38,909 nucleotides of DNA from Octopus sinensis. Lineage: Eukaryota. The notes under the pieces were generated by a model that made no database searches, was not told the DNA's origin, and saw nothing but the letters and a program-made list of their open reading frames with translations. Position numbers and translations under genes: made by a program. Shown here piece by piece: positions 16,284 through 38,909 of the stretch. Within the stretch, counting starts at the first letter, position 1. Every line of letters starts with the position of its first letter. The DNA is taken from the NCBI RefSeq assembly GCF_006345805.1, contig NW_021835836.1, positions 1 through 38,909 on the forward strand, in the 5' to 3' direction.

Positions 16284-16293
16284 TGTGTGTGTG
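14090..16293. repeat. Microsatellite-dominated block: (TA)n, (GA)n, (AAC)n, (CA)n, (ATT)n, with short unique spacers
   Basis: Directly visible. Confidence 0.9.
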
Positions 16294-16572
16294 TGGAGGC
16301 GCAATGGCCCAGTGGTTAGGGCAGCGGACACGCTGTCGTAGGATCGCGGTTTCGATTCCCAGACCGGGCGTTGTGAGTGTTTATTGAGCGAAAACACCTA
16401 AAGCTCCACGAGGCCCCGGCAGGGGTTGGGGATGGCAATCCCTGCTGTACTCTTTCGCCACAACTTTCTTTCAGTCTTTCTTCTGTTGGCCTGCTCGCCT
16501 AGCCAGCGGGGTGGCGTCATTTCAAGGCCAGCAATGTGAAGCAACATCTGATAGCCTGGTCGGTCACGTGAG

Positions 16573-24815: not shown

Positions 24816-24845
24816 GTTTCGATCTTGTTAGATCTCATCAGCGAA
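24816..24845 (-). ncRNA. Partial hammerhead ribozyme motif
   Basis: TTCG-CTGATGA-GATCT-AACA-AGATC-GAAAC: perfect core halves and 5-bp stem II, but no convincing stem III or stem I partner. Confidence 0.45.
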
Positions 24846-33620: not shown

Positions 33621-33995
33621 ATGACACTCCGTCGGTTACGACGACGAGCGTTCCAGTTGATCCGATCAACGGAACAGCCTTCTCGTGAAATTAACGTGCA
33701 AGTGGCTGATTATTCCACAGACACGTGTACCATTAATGTAGTTTTCGGGGAGATTCAGTGTGACACAGAGTGTGACAAGGCCGGCCCTTTGAAATACAGC
33801 TACAACAGAAGCAGGAAGAAAGAGAGAAAGTTGTGGTGAAAGAGTACAGCAGGGTTCACCACCACCCCCTGCCGGAGCTTCGTGGAGCTTTAAGTGATGT
33901 TGCTCAATAAAATCACAACGCCCGGTCTGGGAATCGAAACCGTGATCCTAAGACCGCGAGTCCGCTGCCCTAAACACTGGGCCATTGCACCTCCA
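33621..33995 (-). mobile_element. tRNA-derived SINE family C, full length, tail type 2, nested in a family A copy
   Basis: Head TGGAGGTGCAATGGCCCAGTG..GGTTTCGATTCCCAGACCGGGCG on the minus strand; tail contains the hairpin GTTCC-A-GTTGATC-C-GATCAAC-GGAAC (33650-33675). Confidence 0.9.
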
Positions 33996-34072
33996 CACGC
34001 ACACACACACACATATATATATATGTACACATTCACACACACAAACACACACACACATATATATACACATAG

Positions 34073-36545: not shown

Positions 36546-37299
36546 GTTTTACACAGCTCCCCTATATCTTATTAATGACGTTTAAAATTTCTTCTTTAAT
36601 TACATATACTCCTTAGTTTGCGGTTAATTTCTAATGTTGCAGTTTTAATATTTTTATAGATTTTTTTTGACAAATTCTTTCTTTTTTTTTGTATATAGTT
36701 TTACGCTTTTACCATTTCTTTTCTGATATTTTCTTGTTGTTGTTGTCGTTGATGTTGCTAATCTTGTTACAGCTTTTGTTGTTCTTGTTACCCATTATTC
36801 ATATTGCTTAGTTTATATATATATATATACATGCCTCTGTGCGCGCGCGCGCGCGCGTGTGTGTGTGTGTGTTTGCGTATATAATTTTTGCTAGTTTCTA
36901 AATTCGCAACATAATTTTGAGAAAATTTCGTTATTTATCCTGAAAATATATAACCAAGCACATGGAGAACAACAACGACAAAAAAAACCCACAAAAAAAT
37001 CGTAAGAAAGTATATAAACGTGGAGAGATAGACATATATACATCAAGGCAAATATATACATATATATATATATACATATATATATATGATGAATAACAAA
37101 GAGGAACGAAAAACAAAAGAGTAGAAATAAAAGAAAATCAAGGAATGAGAGAAAAAGAAATATGTAAAGGAGAAAGAAATAAGAGAAAGAAGAAAAATAA
37201 AGAAAGGAATTAAAGAAAAAAAAAGGAGCAAGGTAGTGGAGCTAATGTAGGTGTGGTTTGCAAATTCTGTCTCAGAATTGTGTCCATTTGCAAAATACC

Positions 37300-37530
37300 T
37301 ATTTCTTTACTACCCACAAGGGGCTAAGCATAGAGAGGACAAACAAGGACAGACAAACGGATTAAGTCGATTATATCGACCCCAGTGTGTAACTGGTACT
37401 TATTTAATCGACCCCGAAAGGATGAAAGACAAAGTCGACCTCGGCGGAATTTGAACTCAGAACGTAGCGATAGACGAAATACCGCTGAGCATTTCGCCCG
37501 GCGTGCTAACGATTCTGCCAGCTCGCCGCC
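37300..37530 (-). mobile_element. SINE family B, full length, with 14-bp target-site duplication
   Basis: TSD ATTTGCAAAATACC at 37286-37299 and 37531-37544. Confidence 0.95.
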
Positions 37531-37776
37531 ATTTGCAAAATACCATTGGAGCTTATTTTAAGGACCATGGGTGTACTATAGGGATTTATAGAAAAACTGT
37601 TGGGATTTGAACCAAAAGTTACTGAGTAACAAAAGTATCATTCTGCTAATGAATTTGTGTTATTACAAGTAGACGAAAGTCGACGGCAACTGACCATTGT
37701 GAAAAACCAAAAGTTCGTCTGTTATGGCCACATTCGAAGAAGCTGCTATCTGGGAAATATTATCATGGAAAGAAGG

Positions 37777-38177
37777 AAAGCGGCGAGCTGGCAGCGTCGT
37801 TAGCACGCTGGACGAAATGCTTAGCGGTATTTCGCCCGCCGTTACGTTCTGAGTTCAAATTCCGCCGAGGTCGACTTTGCCTTTCATCCTTTCGGGGTCG
37901 ATTAAATAAGTACCAGTTACGCACTGGGGTCGATATAATCGACTTAATCCGTTTGACTGGCCTTGTTTGTCCTCTCTGTGTTTAGCCCCTTGTGGGTAGT
38001 AAAGAAATAAGTATTTCGCCTGTCGTTGTTACTTTCTGAGTTCAAATTCCGCCAAGATCGAGTTTGCTTTTCATCTTTTTGGAGTCGATTAATCAAGTAC
38101 GAGTTGCGTACTGGGGTCGATGAGATCGACTAGTCTCCTCACCCAAACTTCCAGGCCTTGTGCCTATAGTAGGAAGA
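37777..38177 (+). mobile_element. Composite SINE family B (one head, two bodies, two different tails) with 18-bp TSD
   Basis: TSD ATTATCATGGAA(A/G)GAAGG at 37759-37776 and 38178-38195; the body restarts at GTATTTCGCC (38011). Confidence 0.85.
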
Positions 38178-38510
38178 ATTATCATGGAAGGAAGGCCTGA
38201 GAATAGTGGATCAAGAGGTCGGAAAATACCGCAATGATTGCACGGTATTAAGGACTGGTTTGACAAGAGTGGCAAAGCAGCGGCAGAACTGGCGTTTGAT
38301 CGGGAAGATTTTTATTGTAGTGCCATCAATGCGATGCAGGCGTATGATACATAACGACGACGACGAAGAAGAAGAAGAAAACAAAATTACCACAAACAAG
38401 AAACCAAGTACCCCTAACCCTATCTCTATCCCTAACCAAGCTCAACCCTATGGAAACTAGAATTTCAATGAAGGATACCTTATAACTTACGACGACACAA
38501 CATGAAAAAG

Positions 38511-38654
38511 TACATTATTTACATTTGATGGGTATTTGTCCTCATCCTGTTTGTTGTTAACACAACGTTTCGGCTGATATATCCTCCAGCCTTCATCAGG
38601 TGTCTTGGGGAAATTTCGAACCTGGGTTCTCATTCTTAAGATATTTTTCGATAT

Positions 38655-38691
<37 letters not shown>

Positions 38692-38808
38692 TAATTATTA
38701 TTATTATTATTATTATTATTAGTATTATTCAGGTCACTGCCTGCAATTGAACTCGGAAACTTGGGGTTAGTAACTCGCGCTCTTAACCACTAAGCCACAT
38801 GCTCGTGC
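38511..38808 (-). mobile_element. Candidate tRNA-headed SINE-like element carrying a hammerhead ribozyme
   Basis: Minus strand: A box TGGCTTAGTGG, B-box-like GAGTTCAATTGC, (AAT)n linker, hammerhead at 38559-38604, T5 run at 38505-38509. Confidence 0.65.
38559..38604 (-). ncRNA. Minimal type I hammerhead ribozyme motif
   Basis: GACAC-CTGATGA-A-GGCTG-GAGGATATAT-CAGCC-GAA-ACGT-T-GTGTT: 5-bp stem I (one GU), intact core, 5-bp stem II, palindromic ACGT, GUU triplet; predicted cut between 38564 and 38563. Confidence 0.8.
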
Positions 38809-38814
38809 CAGTGA

Positions 38815-38882
<68 letters not shown>
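38655..38882. repeat. (AAT)n/(ATT)n arrays in inverted arrangement around and within the SINE-like element
   Basis: (AAT)n 38656-38691, (ATT)n 38692-38720, (AAT)n 38819-38882. Confidence 0.9.
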
Positions 38883-38883
<1 letters not shown>

Positions 38884-38909
38884 GAACGACAACAACAACA
38901 AAAAGTAGA

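What the first reader, a model, noticed from the sequence alone, without database searches (positions are those of the whole stretch)
38511..38808. tRNA-headed SINE-like element with a built-in hammerhead ribozyme
Seen on the minus strand, in order: a tRNA-like head (A box TGGCTTAGTGG, B-box-like GAGTTCAATTGC), an (AAT)n linker, the hammerhead GACAC-CTGATGA-A-GGCTG/CAGCC-GAA-ACGT-T-GTGTT, and a T5 run (38505-38509) that could end a Pol III transcript. Established: Penelope-like elements and metazoan non-LTR retrozymes carry minimal type I hammerheads whose palindromic stem III is thought to work as a dimer, and the Schistosoma Sm-alpha element combines a Pol III promoter with a hammerhead. Inference: this is a non-autonomous, Pol III-driven, self-cleaving retroelement family, possibly mobilised by a Penelope-type RT rather than a LINE. 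I do not know of such a family being described for cephalopods. Caveats: the ACGT stem III cannot fold in a monomer, and a TTTT at 38688-38691 may terminate Pol III early in this copy.
Basis: partly seen in the sequence, partly recalled or inferred. Interest (0 to 1): 0.85.

Follow-up and report, generated by a model that had tools for sequence, protein, structure and literature searches.

The report
Solo Penelope-type hammerhead beside a tRNA-like repeat
The hammerhead ribozyme motif is real, but it is the ordinary minimal kind that Penelope-like retrotransposons scatter through animal genomes, and nothing here shows that the neighbouring tRNA-like piece and the ribozyme form one Pol III-driven element.

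Summary
The hammerhead (38604-38559, cleavage 38564/38563) is far beyond chance: one hit in the window and none in 300 simulated windows. It has every defining feature of the minimal type I hammerhead of Penelope-like elements (PLEs). The same ribozyme flavour occurs in 55 metagenome contigs from animal hosts. Two of those contigs carry RT plus GIY-YIG ORFs on the same strand.

The "head" (38819-38729) shares box geometry with the tRNA-derived SINE heads of this octopod window. However, ARAGORN and Rfam do not call it a tRNA, and it folds as a rod hairpin.

The "linker" is two microsatellites of opposite polarity, (AAT)n then (ATT)n, joined at a TTTT. The "T5 terminator" lies inside a roughly 21-nt imperfect direct repeat, a possible target-site duplication, that brackets 38885-38513.

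The best reading is a 5'-truncated PLE 3' end carrying a solo, probably inert hammerhead, with a small tRNA-like retroposon nested in its microsatellite. No second copy of either module could be found, so the composite-SINE idea is untested and disfavoured (about 0.1). This is a new member of a known kind and of low interest.

The parts
38886..38907 (-). Direct repeat copy 1 (TACTTTTTGTTGTTGTTGTCGT), a possible target-site duplication, 2 nt from the window end
   Evidence: Local alignment to 38512-38492 scores 27. That score is reached by 3 of 2000 dinucleotide shuffles but by 7 of 212 real-sequence chunks.
38820..38885 (-). TCTT followed by a pure (ATT)n microsatellite, about 21 units, upstream of the head
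   Evidence: TRF 38819-38883, 100% matches.
38729..38819 (-). tRNA-like 'head'. It has a perfect 11-bp terminal inverted repeat (TCAGGTCACTG / CAGTGACCTGA), an A box at 38797-38787 and a weak B-like box at 38754-38743. It folds as a rod hairpin.
   Evidence: -36 kcal/mol, z = -4.0; collinear with SINE heads at 16290 and 34000. No tRNA call.
38694..38728 (-). (AAT)n tract directly 3' of the head, read as the head's own simple-repeat tail
38653..38693 (-). (ATT)n tract of opposite polarity. The junction carries TTTT at 38691-38688.
38513..38652 (-). 140-nt unique body holding the hammerhead, read as the 3'-terminal piece of a PLE-derived insertion. It ends 50 nt after the cleavage site and has an A/C-rich 3' stretch.
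   Evidence: no other copy in the window; in PLE loci, copy similarity ends +46 to +115 nt from the start of CUGAUGA; here the end is at +86.
38559..38604 (-). Minimal type I hammerhead. Helix I is GACAC/GUGUU. The core is CUGAUGA with an extra A. Helix II is GGCUG(G)/(U)CAGCC. GAAA is followed by the palindrome A-CG-U, with H17 = U. Cleavage is between 38564 and 38563.
   Evidence: Feature list from PMC4209133.
38492..38512 (-).

Best explanation
Two separate repeats lie side by side inside one nested insertion.

(1) The 140-nt body (38652-38513, minus strand), together with the (ATT)n microsatellite 5' of it, is the 3' end of a 5'-truncated Penelope-like-element (PLE) insertion or a solo PLE-derived non-autonomous copy. 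Its min-HHR sits 50 nt from the insertion's 3' end. In an active tandem PLE transcript, two such motifs pair through the ACGU palindrome to build helix III and cut the RNA. As a lone copy this one is expected to be inert.

(2) The 91-nt tRNA-like head with its own (AAT)n tail (38819-38694) is a small SINE-like retroposon. It landed later inside that microsatellite. This explains the polarity switch and the accidental long hairpin.

Shown here: the motif anatomy, its non-chance status, the PLE association of this hammerhead flavour, and the absence of tandem or second copies nearby.

Inferred: the insertion boundaries (from an imperfect direct repeat), the order of events, and the ribozyme's inactivity.
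For: Hammerhead is real and PLE-type:
- The HHR is unique in the window and absent from 300 simulated windows.
- It shows all min-HHR hallmarks listed by Cervera and de la Pena 2014 (PMC4209133): a nucleotide between A9 and G10.1, a G10.1-C11.1 pair, a short helix I, and palindromic 15.2-16.2.
- 55 metagenome loci share the CUGAUGA-A-GGCUG...CAGCC-GAAAC flavour.
- In those loci helix I covaries: GCC/GGC, GCCG/CGGC, TCCC/GGGA, TTGCT/AGCAA, TTCAA/TTGAA.
- L006 and L043 carry RVT_1 plus GIY-YIG ORFs on the HHR strand.
- In those loci, similarity between independent copies ends +46 to +115 nt from the HHR start. The putative 3' end in the window is at +86.

Background from the literature:
- Most min-HHRs are solo motifs from truncated PLEs (PMC4209133).
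- Penelope families are annotated as abundant and active in Octopus (PMC13282606).
- Canonical HHRs are universal in non-Naiad PLEs (PMC8557442).

Evidence that head and ribozyme are separate:
- The spacer is two microsatellites of opposite polarity.
- The T5 run lies in a direct repeat that brackets 38885-38513.
- The head is a self-contained unit with acceptor-like inverted repeats, followed at once by a simple-repeat tail.
Against: - No PLE ORF is present in the window (tblastn), and no octopod PLE pLTR was available to match the 140-nt body.
- The direct repeat is imperfect and low-complexity (7 of 212 real-sequence controls reach its score). The boundaries are therefore uncertain.
- On this reading the microsatellite sits at the 5' end of the minus-strand insertion. 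The more usual picture is a simple-repeat tail at a 3' end, which favours the plus-strand rival.
- Tail-to-target annealing would predict the opposite orientation for the nested head.
- Head and ribozyme are co-oriented and both lie inside the putative duplication. This also fits the composite model.
Confidence: 0.6

Rival explanations
1. The region is a composite, Sm-alpha-like SINE: a tRNA-derived Pol III head, a simple-repeat linker and a PLE-derived tail carrying the hammerhead. It would be retroposed as one unit by a PLE reverse transcriptase.
For: - Head and HHR are on the same strand, 125 nt apart.
- Both lie inside the putative flanking direct repeat.
- The head has an A box and the same box geometry as SINE heads of this genome.
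- The HHR flavour is PLE-type, and SINE tails commonly derive from their partner element.
- Non-autonomous PLE derivatives are known (bioRxiv 10.64898/2026.07.22.740005).
Against: - No second copy of either module was found in 38.9 kb of window, in about 41 kb of other octopod DNA, or in any collection searched.
- A TTTT lies between head and HHR.
- The linker changes polarity, which looks like a junction of two elements.
- 65 nt of TCTT(ATT)n lies between the upstream repeat copy and the head, where a Pol III transcript should start.
- The T5 run is in the flank repeat.
- The B box is not significant.
- The head is not tRNA-like by ARAGORN or Rfam.
Confidence: 0.1
2. The host element is a plus-strand non-LTR retroposon (5'-truncated LINE or SINE). 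Its body is 38513-38652 and its 3' tail is the (AAT)n tract reaching about 38881, flanked by the direct repeat. The head would be nested in that tail in the opposite orientation. The hammerhead would then lie on the antisense strand of that element.
For: - On the plus strand the layout is the classic one: body, simple-repeat tail, then duplication.
- Simple-repeat tails are common next to repeats in this window.
Against: - A complete, non-chance PLE-type hammerhead on the antisense strand of an unrelated retroposon has no explanation.
- Its distance from the minus-strand 3' boundary matches PLE copies.
- No other copy of such a plus-strand family was found.
Confidence: 0.2
3. The motifs are chance resemblances in AT-rich, repeat-rich DNA.
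For: The B-like box and the T runs are at chance level. One A box per window is only mildly unexpected.
Against: - The hammerhead descriptor gives 0 hits in 300 simulated windows.
- The 23 specified bases of core plus helix II recur in PLE-bearing contigs.
Confidence: 0.02

Closest known systems
Minimal type I hammerheads (min-HHR) of Penelope-like elements (Cervera and de la Pena 2014, PMC4209133)
   Same: - Core CUGAUGA...GAAA with an extra nucleotide between A9 and G10.1.
- A G10.1-C11.1 pair.
- Helix I of 5 bp and a long helix II.
- No loop 3, with a palindromic A-CG-U.
- Occurs as a solo motif, as most genomic copies do.
- The AUG inside CUGAUGA opens a short ORF, as in Poseidon PAc (PMC11167929).
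   Different: - No PLE ORF or second pLTR lies nearby.
- The family consensus and activity are unknown.
- No paper held in the library explicitly describes these motifs in cephalopods.
Metazoan non-LTR retrozymes (Cervera and de la Pena 2020, PMC7229834; bioRxiv 10.64898/2026.07.22.740005)
   Same: A short (140-370 nt), AT-rich, non-coding unit with a type I hammerhead. Solo monomers are known, and these elements are thought to be PLE-dependent.
   Different: - Retrozymes are defined by tandem repeats with canonical HHRs that have helix III and its loop.
- Here there is one copy, no tandem, and a minimal HHR.
Schistosoma Sm-alpha / Sj-alpha SINE-like elements with a hammerhead (from my own knowledge, and as cited in PMC4209133)
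   Same: Pol III-type boxes and a hammerhead on the same strand within a few hundred nucleotides.
   Different: - Sm-alpha is a proven multi-copy family with a canonical HHR inside one transcription unit.
- Here the linkage is unproven, a TTTT intervenes, and the HHR is the PLE minimal form.
tRNA-derived SINEs of octopods (copies in this window at 16295-16560 (+), about 33900-34000 (-), and 37290-38180)
   Same: The head aligns collinearly with their A-box, anticodon and B-box regions and is followed by a simple-repeat tail.
   Different: The head is only 91 nt with no body. It has an 11-bp terminal inverted repeat and a rod-like fold, and no other copy was found.

Membership tests
PLE-type minimal hammerhead (min-HHR) | Conserved catalytic core CUGANGA ... 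GAAA with H17 not G | tested here: met
   CUGAUGA at 38599-38593, GAAA at 38571-38568, H17 = U at 38564.
PLE-type minimal hammerhead (min-HHR) | Unpaired nucleotide between A9 and G10.1, and a G10.1-C11.1 pair | tested here: met
   Extra A at 38592; G38591 pairs with C38572 (criteria from PMC4209133).
PLE-type minimal hammerhead (min-HHR) | Short open helix I (4-5 bp), a longer helix II closed by a loop, and palindromic 15.2-16.2 with no or a tiny loop 3 | tested here: met
   Helix I is 5 bp (GACAC/GUGUU). Helix II is 5 Watson-Crick pairs plus 1 GU, with an 8-nt loop. A-CG-U has no loop.
PLE-type minimal hammerhead (min-HHR) | Compensatory variation of the helices across related copies | tested here: inconclusive
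   Helix I covaries across unrelated PLE loci that share this flavour. No copies from the same genome were obtainable, and helix II was fixed by the search pattern.
PLE-type minimal hammerhead (min-HHR) | Lies in a pLTR of an element encoding RT plus GIY-YIG | tested here: not met
   No PLE coding remnant in the window. The same flavour does lie next to RT plus GIY-YIG ORFs in L006 and L043. The literature says most genomic copies are solo (PMC4209133).
PLE-type minimal hammerhead (min-HHR) | Self-cleavage, as a dimer | not testable with these tools
   Needs in vitro transcription of monomer against dimer.
Non-LTR retrozyme | Head-to-tail tandem repeats of 150-450 bp, each with a canonical type I HHR | tested here: not met
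   TRF finds only trinucleotide and hexanucleotide arrays. There is a single HHR in the window, and helix III is minimal.
tRNA-derived SINE (the head) | A and B boxes at tRNA spacing | tested here: inconclusive
   The A box is perfect. The B-like box is 43 nt downstream but has 3 mismatches, which is not significant. The head is collinear with SINE heads of this genome.
tRNA-derived SINE (the head) | tRNA-like cloverleaf or detectable tRNA homology | tested here: not met
   ARAGORN finds 0 genes. Rfam gives no tRNA hit even at E up to 10. The minimum-energy fold is a rod hairpin.
tRNA-derived SINE (the head) | Multi-copy dispersed family | tested here: inconclusive
   No copy in the window or in about 41 kb of O. 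sinensis and Argonauta DNA. The source genome could not be searched.
   TTTT at 38691-38688 lies between them in this copy. The T5 run is in the flanking repeat.
   No cephalopod genome collection is searchable by DNA. All indirect routes returned nothing.

The most novel reading that the evidence does not exclude
Octopods carry a Sm-alpha-like family of Pol III-headed SINEs whose 3' tail is a PLE end with a minimal hammerhead. That would be a SINE mobilised by a Penelope-type reverse transcriptase rather than by a LINE. This locus would be one decayed copy whose linker has expanded and acquired a TTTT.
Probability: 0.1. Interest if true: 0.55.

Novelty: new member of a known kind. Interest (0 to 1): 0.22.

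Why it matters
As it stands the finding adds one more solo PLE-type minimal hammerhead, apparently the first pointed out in an octopod among the papers I could search. It is a useful reminder that such motifs flag truncated PLE ends. If head and ribozyme turned out to travel together genome-wide, it would be a second, independent example after schistosome Sm-alpha of a Pol III SINE built on a ribozyme-bearing tail. It would also be evidence that PLEs can mobilise SINEs. That would interest transposon biologists, but it would not overturn anything.

Tried and rejected
- Rfam at gathering thresholds, and at E up to 10 on the 610-nt region, gave no hammerhead or tRNA family. No library model matched this form, possibly because it lacks a closed helix III.
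- ARAGORN found no tRNA.
- blastn of the head, body and downstream flank against the window found no second copy.
- Exact-pattern scans of viral contigs and genome contigs gave 0 hits.
- The one metagenome scan gave 55 loci. None shares flanks with the window. They are termite-gut, coral and other host contigs, useful only as class-level comparators.
- Six-frame peptides of the ribozyme module and of the head, searched against 5.8 billion proteins to catch spurious ORFs from other copies, gave no hit at E up to 10.
- The look-up of encoding contigs on three window ORFs returned 'not on record', so the source contig beyond 38909 could not be read.
- The LINE RT search gave octopod relatives, Octopus sinensis and Argonauta hians. 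Their loci L056 and L057 (about 41 kb) hold no copy of head or body.
- Two ENA loci (L058, L059) lack the window's SINEs and are not octopod.
- A search for a target-site duplication of the truncated LINE found nothing.
- tblastn of PLE ORFs against the window found nothing.
- Literature searches for hammerheads or retrozymes in cephalopods, and for the SINE and HHR sequence strings, found nothing specific.
- I considered and rejected building a covariance model from the metagenome hits to score the window's HHR. The hits were selected with the window's own helix II, so the test would be circular.
- I considered and rejected a template-switch chimera (PLE RT jumping onto a SINE RNA). The microsatellite polarities give no microhomology, and the upstream (ATT)n stays unexplained.

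Full report
CONTEXT. The window is AT-rich, microsatellite-rich animal DNA packed with SINE and LINE fragments. The closest named relatives of a LINE RT fragment are from Octopus sinensis and Argonauta hians, at 64-66% identity. One of the window's SINE families recurs in an O. sinensis contig at 79-85% identity.

THE OBSERVATION. On the minus strand the order of features is:
- TACTTTTTGTTGTTGTTGTCGT (38907-38886).
- TCTT followed by a pure (ATT)n (38885-38820).
- A 91-nt 'head' (38819-38729).
- (AAT)n (38728-38694).
- (ATT)n (38693-38653), with TTTT at the junction (38691-38688).
- A 140-nt unique body (38652-38513) that holds the hammerhead (38604-38559).

TRF confirms that the only tandem arrays are the microsatellites.

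THE HAMMERHEAD. The anatomy is as follows:
- Helix I: GACAC / GUGUU, 4 Watson-Crick pairs plus 1 GU.
- Core: CUGAUGA, followed by an extra A.
- Helix II: GGCUG(G) / (U)CAGCC, with an 8-nt loop.
- GAAA, then C-G, U16.1 and U17, with cleavage between 38564 and 38563.

A descriptor for this architecture finds only this site in the window on both strands. It finds nothing in 300 first-order Markov simulations of the window.

These are the features that Cervera and de la Pena (PMC4209133) list as hallmarks of the minimal hammerheads of Penelope-like elements:
- a G10.1-C11.1 pair;
- a short helix I of 4-5 bp and a large helix II;
- palindromic 15.2-16.2, so that helix III forms only in a dimer.

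They report thousands of such motifs per metazoan genome, mostly as single copies attributed to truncated PLEs, with no detectable cleavage by single motifs in vitro.

Rfam does not detect this motif. I attribute that to its hammerhead models expecting a closed helix III, which I did not check.

A scan of JGI metagenome contigs for CTGATGAAGGCTG-N4-16-CAGCCGAAAC returned 55 loci, mostly termite-gut and coral samples. All have the same minimal architecture, but helix I takes different, complementary sequences: GCC/GGC, GCCG/CGGC, TCCC/GGGA, TTGCT/AGCAA and TTCAA/TTGAA. Two loci, L006 and L043, carry ORFs with RVT_1 plus GIY-YIG on the same strand, which is the PLE signature. None shares flanking sequence with the window. 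Between independent copies in those loci, similarity stops +46 to +115 nt from the start of CUGAUGA. The ribozyme therefore sits close to the 3' boundary of the inserted unit. This agrees with the Poseidon PAc study, where reverse transcription starts about 85-90 nt beyond the cut site (PMC11167929).

THE HEAD. The A box TGGCTTAGTGG is a perfect match (2 in the window against 0.25 expected). The other match belongs to a bona fide tRNA-derived SINE at 16295. The B-like box has three mismatches and is not significant. The head aligns collinearly with the heads of the window's SINEs. However, ARAGORN and Rfam see no tRNA. The head has a perfect 11-bp terminal inverted repeat and folds as a rod (-36 kcal/mol, z = -4.0). 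With its flanking (ATT)n and (AAT)n tracts it forms a 145-nt hairpin on either strand (-61.8 and -55.2 kcal/mol). I read it as a small tRNA/SINE-derived unit with its own (AAT)n tail. The long hairpin then follows from an acceptor-like stem plus a tail complementary to the host microsatellite.

ARE THE TWO PARTS ONE ELEMENT? I could not obtain a second copy of either module. The following all drew blanks:
- the window itself;
- viral and prokaryotic genome collections;
- six-frame peptide searches;
- look-ups of window ORFs;
- about 41 kb of O. sinensis and Argonauta DNA.

The decisive co-occurrence test therefore remains undone. Within the locus, four things argue against a single Pol III unit:
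- The spacer switches polarity, which looks like the junction of a tail with a host microsatellite.
- A TTTT lies at that junction, upstream of the ribozyme.
- The T5 run belongs to an imperfect 21-22-nt direct repeat whose other copy lies upstream of the (ATT)n. The alignment scores 27, a score reached by 3 of 2000 dinucleotide shuffles but also by 7 of 212 real-sequence chunks, because of the (GTT)n content.
- 65 nt of TCTT(ATT)n separates that upstream copy from the head, where a Pol III transcript should begin.

Two things favour the composite: the modules are co-oriented, and both lie within the putative duplication.

BEST MODEL (confidence about 0.6). A 5'-truncated PLE-derived insertion lies on the minus strand at 38885-38513, with its min-HHR 50 nt from the 3' end. 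Its (ATT)n tract was later hit by a small tRNA-like retroposon (38819-38694). As a lone minimal motif the ribozyme should be inactive.

RIVALS.
- A plus-strand retroposon with an (AAT)n tail and an antisense hammerhead (0.2). The layout is canonical, but a complete PLE hammerhead on its antisense strand would have no explanation.
- Chance (0.02 or less).

COMPARISON AND NOVELTY. The motif is a member of the PLE min-HHR class on every sequence criterion. It fails only the 'inside a full PLE' criterion, as most genomic copies do. It is not a non-LTR retrozyme, because there is no tandem and helix III is minimal. Penelope families are abundant and partly active in Octopus (PMC13282606), and canonical HHRs are universal in non-Naiad PLEs (PMC8557442). 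A PLE hammerhead in an octopod is therefore expected, even though none of the papers I could search describes one. Verdict: a new member of a known kind, of low interest. The composite-SINE reading would be moderately interesting but has only about a 10% chance on present evidence.

Noticed in passing
window 24816-24841 (minus strand): A second hammerhead-like core, CTGATGAG-ATCT-AACA-AGAT-CGAAAC. It has a perfect 5-bp helix II including G10.1-C11.1, but no convincing helices I or III. It is probably a decayed hammerhead remnant next to a (TG)n tract.
   Followed up: partly
window 37560-38354 (plus strand), interrupted at 37780-38180: The C-terminal end of a 5'-truncated LINE ORF (...YGHIRR...IIMEGRP...LAFDREDF..., stop at 38352-38354). 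It looks RTE-like from my own knowledge. It is split by two SINE copies flanked by the duplication ATTATCATGGAA(A/G)GAAGG. The finding's insertion sits in what would be this LINE's 3' UTR.
   Followed up: partly
window 37290-37530 (-), 37780-38020 (+), 38010-38180 (+): Three copies of one SINE family, with arms 93% complementary. The first is flanked by the duplication CATTTGCAAAATACC. The family also occurs in an Octopus sinensis contig (L056 14348-14930) at 79-85% identity.
   Followed up: partly
window 16295-16560 (+) and about 33900-34000 (-): A different tRNA-derived SINE family, with a perfect A box (TGGCCCAGTGG) and a 1-mismatch B box 44 nt downstream. It served as the comparator for the head.
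   Followed up: partly
window 38405-38435 (minus strand): GGTTAGGGATAGAGATAGGGTTAGGGG, two TTAGGG telomere-type units about 130 nt downstream of the hammerhead. They are on the hammerhead strand, the opposite polarity to the reverse-complement telomeric repeats of EN-minus PLEs. They lie outside the putative insertion and are probably coincidental.
   Followed up: no
window 38519-38596 (minus strand): The AUG inside CUGAUGA opens a 25-codon ORF (MKAGGYISRNVV...). In Poseidon PAc the PLE ORF likewise starts within the hammerhead (PMC11167929). Here it stops before the putative 3' end of the insertion.
   Followed up: no
L057 (Argonauta hians, BAAFZT010000004.1) about 17500 (+): A min-HHR-like motif, CTGACGA-A-GGGG-CTATTGA-CCCC-GAAA-AT-T-T, with only a 2-bp helix I. 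It hints that PLE-type hammerheads occur in other octopods.
   Followed up: no
L041 1621-4150 and L043 302-5715: Tandem PLE units in a metagenome contig: an RT plus GIY-YIG ORF, then the min-HHR, then the next ORF starting about 30 nt after the ribozyme. This is a clean example of the pLTR-HHR-ORF arrangement.
   Followed up: partly
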